Assembly (NCBI RefSeq): GCF_037042905.1
Contig: NC_087246.1
Location: 68,200,001 to 68,264,000 of the forward strand
Source: Lytechinus pictus
Lineage: Eukaryota
DNA: 64,000 nt
Reading direction: 5' to 3'
Both the position numbers and the translations under genes were made by a program. Each line of letters starts with the position of its first letter. Position 1 is the first letter of the stretch. Shown piece after piece: positions 31,801 through 40,800 of the stretch. Under the pieces are notes generated by a model, which searched no databases, was not told where the DNA came from, and saw nothing but the letters and a program-made list of their open reading frames with translations.

Positions 31801-34800
31801 AAAATATACCACTCACTAGAGGTTCATGTGGCATGTGCGGTGATACATGCCGTAATACATGGCGTGTCACCTGCTGACTAGGGGGAAGCTATTGGTAAAT
31901 CTTACTTCAAACAAAGCAGTGATTTTGGAGATAAAACAGACACTAAACATATTGTTTGTAAACTAAGGTAGGTCTAAAAGAAGCTAAACAAGTTCAGCTG
32001 GGCGAGCTATAAGCTGGGCAAAGATGCCACTAGGGCTCGAATCATGGGATTTTGTTAATGAGGTCGATATGAGCAAATAATTCAGGGTATGGGTCACAAT
32101 TCTCCCCCCCCCCCAAAAAAAAAAAAATAATAATAATAATAATAATTCAGGGTTCAAAGGGTTAATCATTGCTTAGTGGCAGAAATGTAGAACAGGTCCT
32201 GAAATTTTAGTAATATGAACAACGATCTCTTTTTTTTTTAAACTTACCCCAAAGGATGCCATGATTTGTTGTATTACAACAAAAGCTAGAACAATCAATG
32301 CTGCTAGGAACACATACAGGAAAAATCTGTAATGAAAAATAATCAAATAACGATTACAACTCAATTTTTTTTTTTTTTTAACATTAATACTTGATATTCA
32401 TATGAAATACAAAGAACTTTGAGACGCCTCCCTGGTATTAAATCATAGGAGATAATATACAAACAAATAACTAGGAAGTAGAAGTATTGGTCTGTGTGAT
32501 CAGGATATAGAATAGGTAGGTTTTCAAGTTAGGTTTGAAATACAGAATAATCATATATTGACTGGCTTTGAGGAAGATACCACATATTTCCTGAAGTAAT
32601 TGATGTCTTGATGAGAGCAATATGGGTCTACTGAGGAAAGTATAATCTGGAATCTCCCGAAAATTAAAGCCATTCGATAGTATCATTACCTACATGCCTA
32701 CAGTTGTATGGTGTGTATGTCTGTTGGTACTTCTGAATTCATTAACTTTATGAAGTAATCCTAGCCTTGACTAATTGTGACATGAGTGTATACAGCGCAG
32801 GCGCGCACATACACAAGACTTGCGCTTGGGTTTAATGAAATGGGTACACATACATATATTATGGACCGATAATTTACTACAAAGACGCAAAATGACAAAT
32901 TCGAAGAGTAGTGGTGTATGAATATTATGGTCCCCGTCATACAGCTGAATCCTGGCTGGGCCATTGTGACGTATATTGGGTTGAGTTTATCAATCAGACA
33001 GACAAAATATATGTTTTATATCTTGTCTCCAAAATGCCTCATTCAGATGAAAAAAAACAATCAAGGATATGGTATGTATGTGGCATATCTGAACATACTC
33101 CTTGAAAATATGTCATCTTATCTAGAAAAAATAACTTTACCTCCAAAGTTAACAAAAAAATATCAGGTAAAGAAATTTTCTTTATATAATTTTGGTCATC
33201 TGTCAAAATATTTGCAGCATGAAAATGCTTATCGCTAGTTGTCATGCACTGAATCTTCACTAAACAACAAAATCTTCACTTTGTGATATAAAATGAGAAT
33301 GAAAATTATATGATTTCCTATCTTGAATAAAAACCACAAGAATGGAAGTCATGCCAGAATTTTTTTTTTCAAGACTCCACGGTGTCTTCTCAGTTGAGTT
33401 CCAATAATCTCACTGGCAACTTAACAGAGATATCAATCAATTTGAAAAAAGAAAACTAAGAAAAAGTATGAAATGCTGATCCTACTTGCATAGGTTTAAT
33501 TTCAATAAAATAACAATTGAATTTGATTTTTAACATTGGAAGTCTAAAACAAAAATATTGAACGCATAAGGAGAAATTACTTACGTTTCTGTGTCTAGAC
33601 CTTCATCTAATTCAATAAGAGAAACTGTGTCATTGAAAACAGCATCTGAAAAAAGGTTTCCTTCCTGCATTGATAAAAAAGATGACCAGTATATTAAAGG
33701 TCAAGTCCACCTCAGAAAAATGTTGATTTAAATCAGACAAGCATAATGCTGAAAATTTCATTAAAATCGGATGTAAAATAAGAAAGTTATGCATATAACT
33801 ATTTTGTGAAATTAAACGAAACTTAAAAATTTCATAACTCATAGTTCACTTCACACCAATCAACTTTATAGTTCAAATTATAATCCATTTTGTAACTTGC
33901 TTTGTAGCAAAAATACAATTTTTTTTAAAGCCCTCTCACATGAAATAAAAACTATCATGTACAAAGGTGTTCTCAGACTCTGGTTATCTGAAATCATACT
34001 TTCCCTATCTTGCCACAAAGAAGGGGCTTGTCACAGACTGGACAATGATGGATGCCTACAATAACTAATCTCCACAGAAGTACTCTATGTTTATCAGTAA
34101 GAGCAAGCAGAACCATCATGTCCATTAATGTCTAATGACTAAAGCTCAGGGATGGACTCTAAACCTAGTACAATGAATGAAGACAGCATGAAAAACTCAA
34201 TGCTAGTCAACATTAATAGTAAAGGACAGAGACAAACACTCCTTCATTGAAGTCAAGAGAGGGATAGTTCAGACCAAATGCCTTCCAGCTTAACATCATC
34301 GAACAGGCAACTCGATCACTTTCACATCATATTATAATTGGCTTTTATTATATTTCACACTTTGGGTATGTCGAGTATGGGAAAGGGTGCTGTATGATGT
34401 TACGCAACACCTTTTCTGTATCAAACAAGGAAACGGATGATTGAGAATCAACAATGTTTAATTGAAACTTACTGAATCTTTGTATGCGAGCTCAACAACG
34501 AATCCAAACTGACGTGCAGCAAAGACCTCTCCTGCTTGGAATGAATATTCAAATGTTGCTTCTTTGTTGGGTTCTACTACTGTGTTGTATTCTTTCTCTG
34601 TGAACTAGTAAGCAAAATAAAAAGAAAGATATGAAGCATCGTTTCCTGAATATCATTCATTCATTTCCACCTGACATTATATGGCCAGATGGATTTCTAG
34701 AGAAGAAACCTCTTTAAAAAAATGTAAGAATAAAGATCAAAACAAATGTAAATGAGGGAAAAAGCAATAGAATATTAACTTACAAATACAGACTCTGTTT

Positions 34801-37800
34801 AAACCACAGTAATCTGTTGGAATTGGGAGAAATTTGACTTTAAAACAAAGAATAACATGTGTCTTTCATAATCTAGCCTCAAAATTTACTTTGACTCATA
34901 GAAGGTCGACTTATGCAGTGTTAATCATAGAAAAAATACTTAAATATCAATGTGTATAGGAAAATAAATGAAATATTTTGCATGGTCTAAAGTGTTACAT
35001 TATACAAATAAAAATAATGTGTTTTGAATAAGGATAAAAATCTGTATACATTTTCTGCATTAGCAGTTGTACAGAAAAATGTTTTTGACTGCTTCTTCTT
35101 CTTTATTGTATAGGCAATACAATAAAGCTTAAAGGAAAATGAAACTCTTGGAGCAAGTTAGCTTTTGTGAAAGCAGAAAAATCAAAGAATAAGATCAACA
35201 AAAGTTTGAGTAAAATAGGACTAGCAATAGAAGAGTTATGAGCATTTGAATGTCTAGATCACTAATACTATGGAAATCCTCCAATTGGCAACGCAACCAA
35301 GATCTATGATATCACAGATGAACAACTCTCCCCTTTTGGACACTGAAAATATACCCCAAAACATCTCTTTTTGCTCATTCTAATCATATGACAAACGATT
35401 CATCAATGATATAATGTTGTGAAACATCTGTACTTGTCCTCTCATAAAGAAAACACCTCACCTTGTGATAGATTCTATAAAAGTGAGAATATAAGTGAAA
35501 TAAGTACTAAAGCAATGAGGGAGTTGTACGTGTGTGACATCACAGATCTTGGTCGCATTGCCAATGGGAGGATCTACATGGCATTAGTGATCTCAATATT
35601 CAAATGCTCATAACTTTCTTATTATTCATTCAATCTTCCTCAAACTTTCAACAATATGTTTCTTTGATTTTTCTCTTTGATATGGATTCAGCTGGTTTTA
35701 AGGGTTTCATTCTCCTTTAATTCTGCAATTTACTTTGATGAAACTTACATTGTACATGTAAAATGAGAAGTCCTGTGGATACCGTAGAGATGCATGTAGA
35801 CTGTCAATTGTGAAATCAAGTTGGCCATTGTTTGTAAATCCAACCAAGACTTGTAATGGGATAGTCACTGGGATTTCTACAGAGATACAGAAAGATATTT
35901 TATGATTGCAAGTAATAGATGGTAAATCATGTAACAAACGATTTGCATCCCTATGTATGTAATCAACAAAATTTGAAGGTCTCCGTCCTCTGGTTTTATG
36001 AGGGAGACACAACAAAAGTACATCAGAAATAACTTCCTTCTCACTACGGAAACAGAGACCAGCAAATCTCATAGTACATTTAATTACAGTGAAGAAATTT
36101 CATATAACGAAACAATGTAATGCACATGAATTTTGACATACTAGTACCGTGTTTACACTTAATCGGCATTTGAATCGGCTCGCGGTTCTGAACCGCGAGC
36201 CGATTCAGCATCGGCTTTTTCATAGCGTGTAAACGCAAGCAACTTGAATCGGCTCGCGGTTCAGAACCGGCAATTTGCACCACCAAAGTAGTAGGTTCTG
36301 AACCGCGAGCCGATGCAGAATCGGCTTTTTTACTACGTGTAAACAGAAAGCCAATTCTGCACTGGCAATTTGTGCGCATTTCAATTACTTTACCATTGTG
36401 ACGTAATTGTAAGCGCACTGATCCAGCGTTGTCTTTATTATGACGTATATTGTAGGTATGCGTATCATTTCAGGTTTTTGCATCGGCTCGCGGTTCTGAA
36501 CCGCGAGCTGTAACAACGTGTAAACGCAATCCAAATGCCGATTCTGCATCGGCATTTGGTTCAGAACCAATTGCCGATTAAGTGTAAACACGGTATTAGA
36601 CACCCACATTTTGTGGTATTACCGGCATGCAAATGAGTGTTAACACCGAGCACAGTGATATAGAAATACGTATCACGATCCAAAGTATATATCTTAAAAG
36701 ATTTGGGGAGCATTATTGTAGTCACATATTTTTTTTGTAAAACCTGGTAAAAATATATTTTGGCTATTACTAGAGTTTTGAAAAAGCAGTAGATTCTACT
36801 GTAAGGAGAGTAAAAAAAGTGGAAAGTGGTGAGAATGCTTGAAAAGCAGTAGACTACCACCAAAGGTGGTAGAGTTGGCAGCTATGGGTTTTTCCATTTC
36901 CCCCATGTTAAAGGGATGGTCCAGGCGGGAAATATTTATATCTCAATAAAGAGAGTAAAATTCACAGCGCAAAATGCTGAAAATTTGATCAAAATCGGAT
37001 AACAAATAACAAAGTTATTGCATTTTAAAGATTTGCATTATTCTGGTGAAACAGTTCTAGGCACGTCGTTATGGATATTCATTAGGTGGGCTGATGATGT
37101 CATATCCCCACTTGTTCTTTTGTATATTTTTATATGAAATTAGGTTTATTCAAATATTTTCTACCAAGAACTAAAACAATTGGACTGACAATTGATTGAG
37201 TACATTAGTTATTTATTGCTGCAACTTATTTCATTATGATGGAGACACATCATTTACACATGTATGAAAAAATTAAACATTTATGATTTCATGTAATAAC
37301 ATAAGAAAAAGGAAAGTGGAGATGTGACATCATCAGCCCACCTAATGAATATTCATGACGATGTGCATATAACTGTTTTTAAAAAATATTGATAAACTTT
37401 AAAATTCAATAACTTCATTATTTTTTATTCAATTTGATGAAACTTTCAGCATTTTGCTCTGTGAATTTTACTCTATTTATTTAGATATAAATATTTTCAG
37501 CCCGGACCATCCCTTCAATACTCTAGATGAAGAGTCAAAGAGAAGGATCAAAATCTTACCTTTCTCTGAATTTGTAGTGAAAAGAAAGGTTGTGTCAGCA
37601 TCTGGTGATGCCTTCAGTGGGGGCTCTTCCTCTTCATCCTCCTCCTCTTCCCCTTCTCCTGCTTCTACTGCTGTCCCTTCTTCTTCTACATCTTCTTCTG
37701 TCTCAACCTAATATAGTAAAGATAGTAGCCTTATTATATAAGGGAGTACTGTCAGTCAATATTTTTTTCAAGACATAAAATAATGTTTACCTTGACAGCC

Positions 37801-40800
37801 AATCACAGCTCGCTGTTTAACGTCCTTGTCTCTTTCGGTTCTATTACATGTATAAAGTGTTTTGCTCTAGCGTTCGGGTCATTCATACAATTTTACTCCG
37901 ATGAGTGCATGTCGAAAAGCTTCAGTATGTCCGTTTTTAAGCACTTAGAGACATTCTTTGTGATAAGCGCTATATAAATGTTAATTATTATTATTATTTA
38001 ACGCTACAGTTGTATTTTACAAGATATTTAATACATGTAAACTGGGTTCCAAAAGAAACTGATCAAACTTTACAATCTATGCACATGTGGTACTACAGAC
38101 TACTACCCAAGGATCATATGTACCAAGTATGAACTTAATTGATGCAGAAATAAAGAAATGAGGGCAAGTTGAACAAAAACAAAATAATGATGGACATGTC
38201 CTCATACATGTATCATTTGACCTTTTGACCCGTACAGCGTACACGTACATGTATGTAGATGACCTTTGACCCCATCGATGGTACGACACACATGTGGTAT
38301 TACCTACTGATAACATGTACCAAATATGGACTTAATTGATGCAGAAATAAAGAAATGAGAGCAAGTTGGAACAAAAACTAACATTTTGGAACAGACTGGA
38401 CAATGACTAACATACATATCAGCATGAGGGCTTTGAGGAGTAGGCCTATATCTTTTTTTGCACATGTTTTGCACTATTTTGGCTTCTCTAAAATGATGCG
38501 AAGGTGTTTGGTATATCTTCCGATCGCAAATTCAACAACCCGCAAAAGTGTCGGACCCCATGATTCTTAAAAATTATGTACACGAAATTAACAGCTCTTA
38601 CTATAGAATACTAGCTCTGAGAGACATGGCAATTTCACTATTTCACTTGGAGATGGGAGTAAAATCACATGGGATACTTATTATGAACAAAGGTGTTCTC
38701 AGCCTCTGGTTATCTGAAATCATACTTTCCCTATCTTGCCACAAAGAAGGGGCTTGTCACAGACTGGACAATGATGGATGCCTACAATAACTAATCTCCA
38801 CAGAAGTACTCTATGTTTATCAGTAAGAGCAAGCAGAACCATCATGTCCATTAATGTCTAATGACTAAAGCTCAGGGATGAACTCTAAACCTAGTACAAT
38901 GAATGAAGACAGCATGAAAAACTCAATGCTAGTCAACATTAATAGTAAAGGACAGAGACAAACACTCCTTCATTGAAGTCAAGAGAGGGATAGTTCAGAC
39001 CAAATGCCTTCCAGCTTAACATCATTGAACAAGCAACACAATTTCTTTTAAATGATATTTATAAGGTCTCCATATGTTTAAAATAAAAAAGTGATTAAAC
39101 TTATCAAAACTTTTGCACAATGTTGGATCATTTCAAGAAATGATTGCACTATGATCTCTGTTGGATGATTTCAGACTTAGTTCGGAGTGCCTATTAATAG
39201 TGCCCCCTGTAAGTTTAACAGTACATTGTTTTTTTTTAACACCTACTAAACTTCATGAACCTGGTCAAACCTACTTGGGGCTCGTAACACATAGGTTAGC
39301 GATTAATCGCTAAATGAATGGCTTATCAAGATCATCCTTGCATGCGCGTTTTGCCCTGTAGACTGACTAGGAACCAATCACAATTGTTCTTTCAAATTTG
39401 CGATTAACCGCTAATCTTTGTGTTACGGAGCCCAGGAGGAAGTAACATAATTAATATCCATATTGAATTTTCTTTTATTTATTCATTATAATAATAATAA
39501 TACCGCTGGGAAAACAGTTTTCAGAACTGAAGTGGCTTCCCTGGGTAAATATATACCTAAGATCTTATTATTATTTTCATTATGATCAACTTGATTATAA
39601 CCAATTGTATAATCCTTTGTATACACTGCACATTACCCAGATCATATTATACCTGTCCATCTTCTTCATCTTCCTCCTCCTCTTCCTCTATCTCCTCCCC
39701 ATCCAAGATATCTTCAAGGTTGTCACGAGTTTCTCTCTGATCTTTGGCAGCCAGGGCACCTAGTAATAAAATAAAAGTAACAGTTGTCTATGTTTTGGTT
39801 CAAGATACATCAAGTTTATATTTCTTCTCGGAGAACGGGAGTCTATAACAAAAGGTATATGAAATATACTTTAACTCATTACCACCTCAAAACACTTTAA
39901 ATCATGTCCAGACAAAAAAAGACCCCTATAAATTTTGAGATGAACAACAACTTTCCATTCCGATATTTTCGCCGATATCAATTTTCGGTATTGGTGTGCC
40001 CTGCTGATTAAAACAGCATTTCATTGAACTTCGCAGATTGGTAATGAAACTTGACTTTGAATCATAGCGCATGTGAAAATCAAAACATCACATGCAAATT
40101 TGGCCACCACCGAATCGGCAGGTTTCTGACACGCATAAGAAAAATCCTGGCGAGAACGCTGGTCGACTCATCACTGAGAAAACTTCATAAAGTTTGATAC
40201 AAAATTATGCAAATTGCACCTAGAATATGCATTTATTTGCATATTCAAGGTAAATGTAAATCAAACAGTTTTAAAATGTAGAGAATCCCATAAACTTCAA
40301 AACGAATGGTCATGACATAGGTCTACACATGTTATCAGTAGTAGAGTAAAGTCCCCAAACATCGGACAATTCCAAATATCGGACGAAAATGACGACTCTC
40401 TCCTCATAACTACAGGGACCCGCACTGGCAGGGGACTTGCATGCATAAGATACATGAACATACCTGCCATGCGATTACTGCACACACAATTTTTTTAATT
40501 CTTTTTTATTTCGCCAAGACGCATATCGCGATATGCGTGGTGTCATCTTGGCGAAATACAAAGAGATCAAGATGGTGACGTAAACACGGTGGCAAGTTAT
40601 TCCCGTCTTTTCATATTTTTCTTGTTATTTTAATGAATTCTTGTTTAAAAATGAAATTGATAGTGTTGAAATGTCGGAAATGGAGTTGTATCCCATTTAC
40701 ATGATGATTTAGGGCTAGATCTTTCAGAAGTGAAGTAGAAATCTTGGGGGCAAAAACTCCTGTTTCTTGGGCGGTACACGTACATGAATGGGAAGGAATC

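What the first reader, a model, noticed from the sequence alone, without database searches (positions are those of the whole stretch)
34269..34292. D' guide of the long C/D RNA predicts 2'-O-methylation at the 28S A equivalent to yeast Am2280
Seen: AGGCATTTGG-T-CTGA in both copies. Established: eukaryotic large-subunit rRNA has the conserved GUAGCCAAAUGCCUCGUC segment; yeast snR13 guides Am2280/Am2281, and vertebrate U15/SNORD15 (...GAGGCAUUUG-U-CUGA, recalled) guides the third A. Inference: a 10-bp duplex plus one G-U and the D+5 rule point to the second A, one nt 5' of the U15 site and two nt from the NSUN5/Rcm1 m5C. The D-box guide (AACCAGAG) only gives an 8-9-nt match to the U5 snRNA 5' end as recalled, so I treat it as orphan.
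Basis: partly seen in the sequence, partly recalled or inferred. Interest (0 to 1): 0.7.

Follow-up and report, generated by a model that had tools for sequence, protein, structure and literature searches.

The report
snoRNA guide for neighbouring 28S adenosine
Two introns of a sea-urchin gene each make an abundant, unusually long guide RNA whose first guide should direct sugar methylation of an adenosine in the large ribosomal RNA, next to the one targeted by the classical U15 guide; yeast methylates this site, but I found no report of it in animals.

Summary
AGGCATTTGGTCTGA lies on the minus strand at 34283-34269 and 39009-38995, in two 339-nt copies that are 99% identical while their flanks are unrelated. 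Each copy has the parts of a box C/D snoRNA: a 5-bp terminal stem, C box AUGAUGU, a 20-nt spacer, D' CUGA, a roughly 270-nt structured insert closed by a 10-bp stem, C' AUGAUUU, a 14-nt spacer and D CUGA.

rRNA-depleted RNA-seq covers exactly this stretch at 500-2000x, on the sense strand only. The flanking intron has zero reads and the SSR1 host exons have 5-9x.

This species' 28S holds GUAGCCAAAUGCCUCGUC once. The D' spacer pairs with it by 10 Watson-Crick pairs plus one G-U. Position 5 falls on A2629, the second A, which corresponds to yeast A2280.

The same genome also carries SNORD15-like RNAs (four copies) and an 84-nt RNA (two copies). Both aim at the third A (A2630), and the SNORD15-like RNA also aims at G2637.

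The long RNA's register, box and duplex length match fungal snR13 and Neurospora CD1, not U15.

Methylation itself is untested, and conservation across species is only weakly documented.

Verdict: a sound prediction of an ordinary kind with a modest twist.

The parts
33968..34306 (-). Copy A of the 339-nt box C/D RNA, in an 808-nt SSR1 intron (33664-34471)
   Evidence: Copy A is 99% identical to copy B while the flanks are unrelated. rRNA-depleted RNA-seq gives 500-2000x depth confined to 33959-34315, on one strand only. Fragment ends lie at 33972-33978 and 34294-34295, and the spliced joint is 33663/34472. The fold z-score is -4.1.
34301..34305 (-). 5' half of the terminal stem, UGUUC
   Evidence: It pairs with GAACA at 33972-33968.
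34293..34299 (-). C box AUGAUGU (6 of 7 matches to RUGAUGA)
   Evidence: The box is identical in both copies. The alternative register UCGAUGA is broken in copy B.
34273..34292 (-). D' spacer UAAGCUGGAAGGCAUUUGGU. Positions 1-11 pair with 28S 2625-2635, and position 5 pairs with A2629.
   Evidence: There are 10 Watson-Crick pairs plus 1 G-U, the best hit among rRNAs and snRNAs. Duplex dG is -18.7 kcal/mol, like this genome's U15-type guides. No read variants are listed here.
34269..34272 (-). D' box CUGA
34003..34263 (-). Structured insert between D' and C'. The closing stem is CCCUCUCUUG (34263-34254) with CAAGAUAGGG (34012-34003). Inside are two long rod-like hairpins.
   Evidence: Seen in the minimum-energy and centroid folds. 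All listed differences between the window and the reads, other than nt 330, fall in this insert.
33991..33997 (-). C' box AUGAUUU (degenerate)
   Evidence: Read directly from the sequence. It lies 5 nt after the closing stem.
33977..33990 (-). D spacer CAGAUAACCAGAG(U/G), an orphan
   Evidence: The best matches are 8 Watson-Crick pairs (18S U1315, 28S U1097), which 220 of 1000 shuffles equal. No snRNA match exceeds 5.
33973..33976 (-). D box CUGA
33968..33972 (-). 3' half of the terminal stem, GAACA
   Evidence: The lowest read starts are at 33972.
38694..39032 (-). Copy B of the same RNA. Every part lies at the copy A coordinate plus 4726: D' spacer 38999-39018, D' box 38995-38998, C box 39019-39025, D box 38699-38702.
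   Evidence: It differs from copy A at nt 1, 7, 152 and 330. The RNA-seq reads carry the copy B letters at nt 152 and nt 330.

Best explanation
The stretch is the D' box and upstream antisense element of a genuine, highly expressed intronic box C/D snoRNA. The RNA is 339 nt long and is present in two SSR1 introns.

Proposed mechanism: the RNA is released from the spliced intron and trimmed back to the C/D terminal kink-turn. Its D' spacer pairs with 28S rRNA 2625-2635 (G-CCAAAUGCCU, between helices 70 and 71). The methyltransferase bound at the C'/D' motif then 2'-O-methylates the nucleotide opposite spacer position 5. That nucleotide is A2629, the second A, which corresponds to yeast A2280. 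A long structured insert separates D' from C', and a 10-bp inner stem brings the two boxes back together.

This genome's SNORD15-like and 84-nt snoRNAs cover the third A (A2630) and G2637. The segment would then carry a yeast-like cluster, Am-Am plus Gm next to the m5C position, with the two adenosines written by separate guide RNAs. By analogy with yeast snR13, which methylates positions 5 and 6 from one D' guide, the long RNA may also contribute to A2630.

Shown here: the RNA, its boxes, its expression and the base pairing. Inferred: snoRNP assembly, nucleolar location and the methyl group itself.
For: 1. The RNA has canonical C/D anatomy, and both copies keep it while their flanks are unrelated.

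2. It accumulates as a stable RNA. Depth is 500-2000x on the sense strand only and is sharply bounded at the predicted ends. The flanking intron has 0x and the host exons 5-9x, in two rRNA-depleted runs.

3. The D' spacer makes 10 Watson-Crick pairs plus 1 G-U with a unique 28S site in this species. This is the top hit among 18S, 5.8S, 28S, U1, U2, U4, U5 and U6, and 24 of 1000 shuffles equal it. Its dG of -18.7 kcal/mol is equal to this genome's own U15-type guides at -18.4 to -20.1.

4. The target nucleotide is a proven methylation site in yeast: A2280m and A2281m by snR13 (PMC4174444). Yeast snR13 uses one guide upstream of box D', at positions 5 and 6 (PMC8053127). Neurospora CD1, the snR13 homologue, is intronic and has a D' guide with a 10/0 match aimed at 26S Am2242. 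That site is 8 nt before Gm2250, which makes it the second A (PMC2780460). Box, register and duplex length are therefore all the same as here.

5. Across the whole genome, only these two loci combine GGCATTTGG-N-CTGA with a C box at the right distance.

6. A 376-nt contig from a second organism label is about 95% identical to the RNA. None of its 15 listed differences falls in the C box, the D' spacer or the D' box. Its 3' flank carries two substitutions and an 8-nt insertion within 35 nt.
Against: - No modification data exist for this animal, so the methyl group is not shown.
- The duplex is short (10+1), and a match of this length is reached by about 2% of shuffled spacers.
- The C box ends in U rather than A, and C' is degenerate (AUGAUUU) and about 270 nt from D'. 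Activity of the C'/D' motif is therefore assumed, not shown.
- The target overlaps the binding sites of at least two other snoRNA families in this genome, which could outcompete it.
- Conservation evidence is thin. The two copies are 99% alike over their whole length, so they say nothing specific about the guide. Only one related sequence was seen, and two of its 17 differences are not listed.
- I found no report of methylation at the second A in any animal. Human, Arabidopsis and Dictyostelium tables list only the third A and the G (PMC5389715, PMC8053127, PMC8817022).
- The RNA matches no Rfam family, even at E up to 10.
Confidence: 0.65

Rival explanations
1. The guide pairs with 28S at this site, but the outcome is not a new methyl group on the second A. 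One possibility is that it mainly supports methylation of the third A (A2630) through position-6 activity, as in snR13, which would make it redundant with the U15-type guides. Another is that it acts as a transient folding or timing chaperone for the H69-H71 region, with the large insert providing further contacts.
For: Yeast snR13, U18 and U24 methylate positions 5 and 6 from one D' guide (PMC8053127). Three snoRNA families in this genome have overlapping binding sites on a 13-nt stretch. The unusually long, strongly structured insert (z = -4.1) has no explained role.
Against: The D+5 rule is the norm. The spacer abuts a perfect CUGA, and an inner stem places C' beside D'. Six gene copies already cover A2630 with longer duplexes of 11 Watson-Crick pairs. 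No further rRNA complementarity above chance exists in the insert.
Confidence: 0.17
2. The 28S complementarity is a chance match or a relic, and the RNA is functionally an orphan C/D RNA. It would then have another target (an mRNA, a tRNA or another non-coding RNA) or a non-guide role.
For: About 2% of shuffled spacers match this well. The other spacer is clearly an orphan. The C' box is degenerate. There is no Rfam family. No methylation of the second A has been reported in animals.
Against: The match lands on one of about 100 known methylated rRNA positions and in the correct register. The same arrangement is used by fungi (PMC2780460, PMC8053127). No rRNA or snRNA alternative comes close: the next best has 7 Watson-Crick pairs with 2-3 G-U. 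tRNAs and mRNAs were not scanned.
Confidence: 0.13
3. The RNA is a composite C/D-H/ACA Cajal-body RNA of the U85/U87 type. Those RNAs are also about 270-330 nt long and carry an H/ACA domain between D' and C'. It would act on spliceosomal snRNAs rather than rRNA.
For: The length fits. Two hairpins sit between D' and C'. There is an ANANNA motif (ACAUUA, nt 176) between them, an ACA at nt 276 followed by 3 nt and the closing stem, and a UGAG in the apical loop of the first hairpin (nt 108).
Against: The hairpins are near-continuous rods with no pseudouridylation pocket, and the ACA is base-paired in the predicted fold. No H/ACA or scaRNA family hit appears at E up to 10. No spacer matches this species' U1, U2, U4, U5 or U6 by more than 6 Watson-Crick pairs.
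Confidence: 0.04

Closest known systems
Fungal snR13 (S. cerevisiae snR13; Neurospora crassa CD1)
   Same: - The guide lies upstream of box D'.
- The duplex is about 10 bp.
- Spacer position 5 faces the second A of CCAAAUG. This is yeast A2280, and Neurospora Am2242 lies 8 nt before Gm2250.
- The Neurospora gene is intronic.
- Sources: PMC4174444, PMC8053127 and PMC2780460, compared.
   Different: - The fungal RNAs are about 124-125 nt; this one is 339 nt with a roughly 270-nt structured insert.
- No sequence similarity could be shown, and there is no Rfam hit, so common descent is untested.
- Yeast snR13 also methylates the third A, whereas here dedicated U15-type guides cover it.
- The Neurospora table lists no plant or human homologue of snR13.
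SNORD15 / U15 (Rfam RF00067; plant U15 and SNOR75, Drosophila Me28S-Am2589, Tetrahymena TtnuCD10, Plasmodium snoR21)
   Same: Both are antisense to the same 28S segment, with a shared GGCAUUUG core. U15 is also a relatively long C/D RNA with a structured middle.
   Different: - The U15 guide is GAGGCAUUUG-N-CUGA upstream of box D, so position 5 faces the third A (human A3764). Its D' guide, GAUGACGAG, aims at the G (human G3771, Arabidopsis G2289) (PMC5389715, PMC8053127).
- The long RNA has one extra G, uses box D', lacks the G guide, and gives no SNORD15 hit even at E up to 10.
- True SNORD15-like genes exist elsewhere in this genome, for example L014:1368-1519 at E = 1.8e-12.
One-nucleotide register shifts between snoRNA paralogues
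   Same: The same antisense core sits one base further from the box, which moves the methyl group to the neighbouring nucleotide. An earlier scan note (s1-311590) describes this for SNORD58-like copies in this genome.
   Different: Here the shifted guide sits in a different RNA backbone and at the other box (D' rather than D). Only the termini UGUUCAAUGAUG...CUGAGAAC resemble the 84-nt U15-type RNA. Paralogy is therefore not established.
Composite C/D-H/ACA scaRNAs (U85, U87, U88, U89; from my own knowledge)
   Same: The overall size is similar, and both carry a two-hairpin insert between D' and C'.
   Different: The insert has no pseudouridylation pockets. There is no snRNA complementarity and no family match.

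Membership tests
Box C/D snoRNA (2'-O-methylation guide) | C box (RUGAUGA) near the 5' end and D box (CUGA) near the 3' end, joined by a short terminal stem | tested here: met
   The C box is AUGAUGU (6 of 7), the D box is CUGA, and the 5-bp stem is UGUUC/GAACA, in both copies. The seventh C-box base, U, can pair with the G before box D in copy B and in the reads.
Box C/D snoRNA (2'-O-methylation guide) | Internal D' and C' boxes brought together | tested here: inconclusive
   D' is a perfect CUGA. C' is a degenerate AUGAUUU. The two lie about 270 nt apart but are flanked by a predicted 10-bp stem with one mismatch. Function of the motif cannot be tested here.
Box C/D snoRNA (2'-O-methylation guide) | Accumulates as a discrete stable RNA excised from an intron, sense to the host gene | tested here: met
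   Depth is 500-2000x within 33959-34315 on the host strand only. The flanking intron has 0x and the exons 5-9x. The intron joint is 33663/34472. The host was confirmed as SSR1/TRAP-alpha.
Box C/D snoRNA (2'-O-methylation guide) | At least 9-10 nt of contiguous antisense directly upstream of D or D', covering position 5, against an rRNA or snRNA | tested here: met
   The D' spacer makes 10 Watson-Crick pairs plus 1 G-U with 28S 2625-2635, and position 5 pairs with A2629. The D spacer does not meet this (8 Watson-Crick pairs).
Box C/D snoRNA (2'-O-methylation guide) | Bound by fibrillarin, NOP56, NOP58 and SNU13; target nucleotide methylated | not testable with these tools
   This needs immunoprecipitation or CLASH and RiboMeth-seq.
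snR13 family (fungal) | D' guide with position 5 on the second A of 25S/28S CCAAAUG | tested here: met
   See, compared with PMC8053127 (positions 5 and 6 upstream of D') and PMC2780460 (Nc CD1: D', 10/0, Am2242).
snR13 family (fungal) | Sequence and structure homology to family members | tested here: not met
   No Rfam family of any kind matches the locus at the gathering score or at E up to 10. No fungal sequence was available for direct comparison.
SNORD15 / U15 (RF00067, clan CL00045) | D guide GAGGCAUUUG-N-CUGA (third A) and D' guide GAUGACGAG-N-CUGA (the G 7 nt downstream) | tested here: not met
   The guide lies at D', is shifted by one nt, and there is no G guide. This genome's true SNORD15-like genes show both guides.
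SNORD15 / U15 (RF00067, clan CL00045) | Match to the covariance model | tested here: not met
   No SNORD15 match appears at E up to 10 in 33800-34500. By contrast, L014 scores 60 bits with E = 1.8e-12.
Composite C/D-H/ACA scaRNA | H/ACA domain with pseudouridylation pockets, single-stranded H and ACA boxes, and snRNA targets | tested here: not met
   Motif strings are present, but there is no pocket and the ACA is paired in the fold. No snRNA complementarity was found, and no Rfam hit.

The most novel reading that the evidence does not exclude
Echinoderm 28S would carry tandem Am-Am at the second and third A of CCAAAUG, as in yeast, but written by two separate guide RNAs. The 339-nt RNA would be an animal counterpart of fungal snR13, which the Neurospora table lists without a plant or human homologue. 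That would mean the snR13-type D' guide is either ancient in opisthokonts and lost in insects and vertebrates, or reinvented by a one-base shift. Its large structured insert could add a second, non-catalytic role in folding the H69-H71 intersubunit-bridge region.
Probability: 0.2. Interest if true: 0.6.

Novelty: new member of a known kind. Interest (0 to 1): 0.4.

Why it matters
The target lies between helices 70 and 71 of the large subunit, beside intersubunit bridge B3. In yeast this methylation cluster (m5C2278, Am2280, Am2281, Gm2288) supports 60S stability and translational fidelity (PMC4174444).

If the prediction holds, a sea urchin would be the first animal I could find with a methyl group on the second A. 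It would show how a one-base shift of the same antisense core adds a neighbouring modification. It would also give a clean case of three snoRNA families competing for a 13-nt rRNA stretch.

The prediction is directly testable in a classical embryological model. It also gives a concrete function to an otherwise puzzling 339-nt intronic RNA. It does not reveal a new kind of system.

Tried and rejected
1. **Rfam.** Scans of the whole window at gathering scores and of the locus at E up to 10 gave no family. The only hits were a weak SNORD103-like match (E = 5) on an internal AUGAUGG...CUGA pseudo-unit and unrelated noise.

2. **U5 as target of the D spacer.** This species' U5 lacks the CUCUGGUU 5' end. 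U1, U2, U4, U5 and U6 were scanned with all four CUGA-adjacent spacers, and nothing exceeded 6 Watson-Crick pairs. U12-type snRNAs, tRNAs and mRNAs were not scanned.

3. **Whole-RNA complementarity to pre-rRNA, spacers included.** Nothing was longer than the 10-mer. The 9-mers found, including AGAUAGGGA against 28S 2685-2693, are at chance level.

4. **Unconstrained duplex search.** It finds gapped duplexes of similar energy elsewhere, but these do not obey the C/D geometry.

5. **Composite H/ACA reading.** Rejected; see the rival explanations.

6. **Conservation in other echinoderms.** I searched protein representatives with SSR1 exon 4, where the best hit was 62% identical. I looked up encoding contigs for two hits; one had no DNA and the other was cDNA. 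A homologue search with exon 5 found nothing, and one with a full-length hit listed only lophotrochozoan SSR1 proteins in its top 120. A metagenome pattern scan gave 120 loci, the ones read in context looking like chance matches and none similar to the RNA. None of these routes reached an echinoderm SSR1 locus.

7. **Literature.** The Arabidopsis paper says the position-5 site of snR13 is the one kept in plants. That does not fit its own numbering (A2282 lies 7 nt before G2289, which makes it the third A), so I relied on the numbering.

8. **rDNA search.** The first search with the LSU model failed on the server. I used a pattern search instead.
Full report
**Observation**

The 15-mer AGGCATTTGGTCTGA occurs twice in the window, both times on the minus strand, at 34283-34269 and 39009-38995. 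Read on that strand, each occurrence sits near the 5' end of a 339-nt unit. The two units differ at 4 positions (nt 1, 7, 152 and 330), while the sequence on either side does not align. The genome holds only these two copies.

**Anatomy** (copy A; RNA nt = 34307 minus the window position)

- Terminal stem: UGUUC (34305-34301) with GAACA (33972-33968).
- C box: AUGAUGU (34299-34293).
- D' spacer: 20 nt, UAAGCUGGAAGGCAUUUGGU (34292-34273).
- D' box: CUGA (34272-34269).
- Inner stem: CCCUCUCUUG with CAAGAUAGGG, enclosing two long rod-like hairpins.
- C' box: AUGAUUU (33997-33991).
- D spacer: 14 nt (33990-33977).
- D box: CUGA (33976-33973).

The whole RNA folds much better than shuffles of itself: -112.5 kcal/mol, z = -4.1. 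Copy B is the same, shifted by +4726.

**Is it a real RNA?**

I laid two rRNA-depleted RNA-seq runs, one cDNA run and one set of contigs on 33500-35000. In the rRNA-depleted runs, depth is 500-2000x across 33959-34315. It comes from one read orientation only, the same orientation as the host exons. Depth is zero in the intron on both sides and 5-9x on the exons at 34469-34621 and 33602-33652. Fragment starts cluster at 33972-33978 and fragment ends at 34294-34295. That is what a 339-nt RNA ending just past box D would give in a randomly primed library.

Spliced reads join 33663 to 34472 (GT..AG on the minus strand), so the RNA lies in an 808-nt intron. tblastn of fetched TRAP-alpha proteins gives colinear minus-strand exons, and one exon hits PF03896 weakly. 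Earlier notes of this scan call the genome a sea urchin. I did not test that.

**The target**

A pattern search found the conserved LSU segment in tandem rDNA units of about 14.3 kb. I fetched one unit and delimited 18S, 5.8S and a 3764-nt 28S with Rfam. GUAGCCAAAUGCCUCGUC occurs once, at 28S 2622-2639.

An ungapped scan that enforces box C/D geometry gives, for the D' spacer, 10 Watson-Crick pairs (spacer positions 2-11 with CCAAAUGCCU, 2626-2635) plus G2625-U at position 1. Position 5 lies opposite A2629. The runner-up has 7 Watson-Crick pairs with 2-3 G-U.

With strict criteria (contiguous duplex, at most one G-U, starting by position 3, covering position 5), 24 of 1000 shuffled spacers do as well somewhere in 6.4 kb of rRNA and snRNA. 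The duplex energy is -18.7 kcal/mol, the same as this genome's U15-type guides.

The match by itself is thus modestly significant. Its placement against a perfect D' box, and on a known modification site, is what makes it convincing.

**Numbering**

In yeast the modified residues are m5C2278, Am2280, Am2281 and Gm2288, and G2283 stacks on C2278 (PMC4174444). Those residue identities fit C-A-A-A-U-G-C-C-U-C-G only if A2280 is the second A and A2281 the third.

Human SNORD15A guides A3764, and G3771 is also methylated (PMC5389715). The 7-nt spacing makes A3764 the third A. Arabidopsis U15 guides A2282 with its D guide and G2289 with its D' guide (PMC8053127), which is the same pair.

A2629 therefore corresponds to yeast A2280.

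**What else in this genome aims at the segment**

Searching the genome for AGGCATTTGNCTGA and reading the contexts uncovered two further snoRNA families.

1. A 151-155-nt RNA, with one copy on contig 7 and three clustered copies on contig 10. Its D' guide GAUGACGAGG aims at G2637 (10 Watson-Crick pairs), and its D guide CGAGGCAUUUG aims at A2630 (11 Watson-Crick pairs). It matches Rfam SNORD15 end to end at E = 1.8e-12, below the gathering score.
2. An 84-nt RNA with two copies on contig 14. Its D guide aims at A2630, and it resembles plant SNOR75 and Drosophila Me28S-Am2589.

The Rfam consensus lines for SNORD15, SNOR75, Me28S-Am2589, Tetrahymena TtnuCD10 and Plasmodium snoR21 all read GAGGCAUUUG-N-C(U/A)GA. 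The third-A register is therefore shared across these five families from distant eukaryotes.

The register GGCAUUUGG-N-CUGA occurs 14 times in the genome. Only the two SSR1 copies have a C box at the right distance.

**Closest known**

Yeast snR13 methylates A2280 and A2281 with a single guide upstream of box D', at positions 5 and 6 (PMC8053127). Its Neurospora homologue CD1 is intronic, 125 nt long, and has a D' guide with a 10/0 match aimed at 26S Am2242. That site is 8 nt before Gm2250, which makes it the second A (PMC2780460).

Box, register and duplex length thus match the sea-urchin RNA. Size does not (339 against about 125 nt), and sequence similarity could not be shown. The RNA works like snR13. 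Whether it is a relative is open.

The 84-nt RNA and the long RNA share the termini UGUUCAAUGAUG...CUGAGAAC. This hints at, but does not prove, an origin within the local U15-type family by a one-base insertion.

**The other spacer and other targets**

The D spacer reaches only 8 Watson-Crick pairs (18S U1315, 28S U1097), which 220 of 1000 shuffles equal. No spacer next to any of the four CUGA motifs matches U1, U2, U4, U5 or U6 by more than 6 Watson-Crick pairs.

**The insert**

Because U85-type composite scaRNAs are of similar size, I looked for an H/ACA domain. ANANNA, ACA and UGAG strings are present. However, the hairpins are near-continuous helices without pockets, the ACA is paired in the fold, and no H/ACA family matches. 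I rate this reading as unlikely.

**Conservation**

A 376-nt contig from a second organism label covers 33933-34299 with 17 substitutions. Fifteen of them are listed, and none lies in the C box, the D' spacer or the D' box. The 35 nt of 3' flank carry two substitutions and an 8-nt insertion.

The rRNA-depleted reads differ from the assembly at several insert positions. They carry the copy B letters at nt 152 and nt 330. At nt 330, G rather than U can pair with the last base of the C box.

This is weak evidence for constraint on the functional ends. All attempts to reach other echinoderm SSR1 loci failed.

**Verdict**

- That this is a real, abundant box C/D snoRNA is close to certain.
- That its D' guide methylates A2629 I put at about 0.65.
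- The main alternatives are redundancy with, or a chaperone action at, the same site, or an orphan RNA whose 28S match is a chance match or a relic.

It is a new member of a well-known kind. The modest twists are a fungal-type register in an animal, a division of labour with U15-type guides, and an oversized backbone.

Noticed in passing
L014:1368-1519 (G000 C7:32207185-32207336); L018:1364-1518, L018:2285-2439, L019:2501-2655 (G000 C10, about 21.875-21.877 Mb): There are four SNORD15-like genes of 151-155 nt, three of them clustered within about 2 kb. The D' guide aims at 28S G2637 and the D guide at A2630. Rfam SNORD15 scores 60 bits (gathering score 75), E = 1.8e-12. No obvious exons lie around the cluster, so the host is unknown.
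   Followed up: partly
L022:1435-1518 and L023:1435-1518 (G000 C14:12374367 and 12382406): Two copies of an 84-nt C/D snoRNA lie 8 kb apart. The D guide CGAGGCAUUUG aims at A2630. The RNA resembles plant SNOR75 (E = 1e-4) and Drosophila Me28S-Am2589 (E = 0.035). It shares the termini UGUUCAAUGAUG...CUGAGAAC with the 339-nt RNA.
   Followed up: partly
window 33653-33856: A high-copy repeat lies in the same intron. It is covered on both strands at hundreds to thousands of reads, with many opposite-strand joints and loose ends. It is probably a transposon with inverted repeats, sitting between the snoRNA and the 3' splice site.
   Followed up: no
window 33977 and 34155 (RNA nt 330 and 152): RNA-seq reads carry almost only the copy B letters: 95 of 101 at 33977 and 1530 of 1531 at 34155. 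Either only the copy B type accumulates, or the sequenced animals have it in both copies. U330 of copy A gives a U-U where G330 can pair with the last base of the C box.
   Followed up: partly
window 34269-34283 against 33977-33994 (RNA nt 24-41 with nt 313-330): In the minimum-energy fold, the D' guide and box pair with the C'-to-D spacer: UCUGAA with UUCAGA, and UUUGG with CCAGA. This could be a coincidence or an internal mask of the guide.
   Followed up: no
window 34047-34126 (RNA nt 182-262): The second hairpin contains an internal pseudo C/D' unit, AUGAUGG followed by 15 nt and CUGA. It gives a weak SNORD103-like Rfam hit (E = 5.3). Its spacer has no rule-compliant rRNA match: the best, 28S G1371, pairs only from position 5 outward (9 Watson-Crick pairs with 3 G-U), with positions 2-4 mismatched. 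The motif is mostly base-paired in the fold.
   Followed up: partly
It reads AAUGAUAC ... CCUGAUCAC. It was not covered by the reads I laid and was not analysed here.
   Followed up: no
G000 C13:21.634-21.679 Mb; C8:33.237-33.285 Mb; C2:31.961-32.010 Mb; C14:25.097-25.120 Mb: There are large tandem arrays of snRNA genes: U5 in units of about 1.36 kb, U2 about 1.04 kb, U1 about 1.4 kb and U4 about 1.2-1.5 kb. The rDNA units of about 14.3 kb are spread over many small contigs.
   Followed up: no
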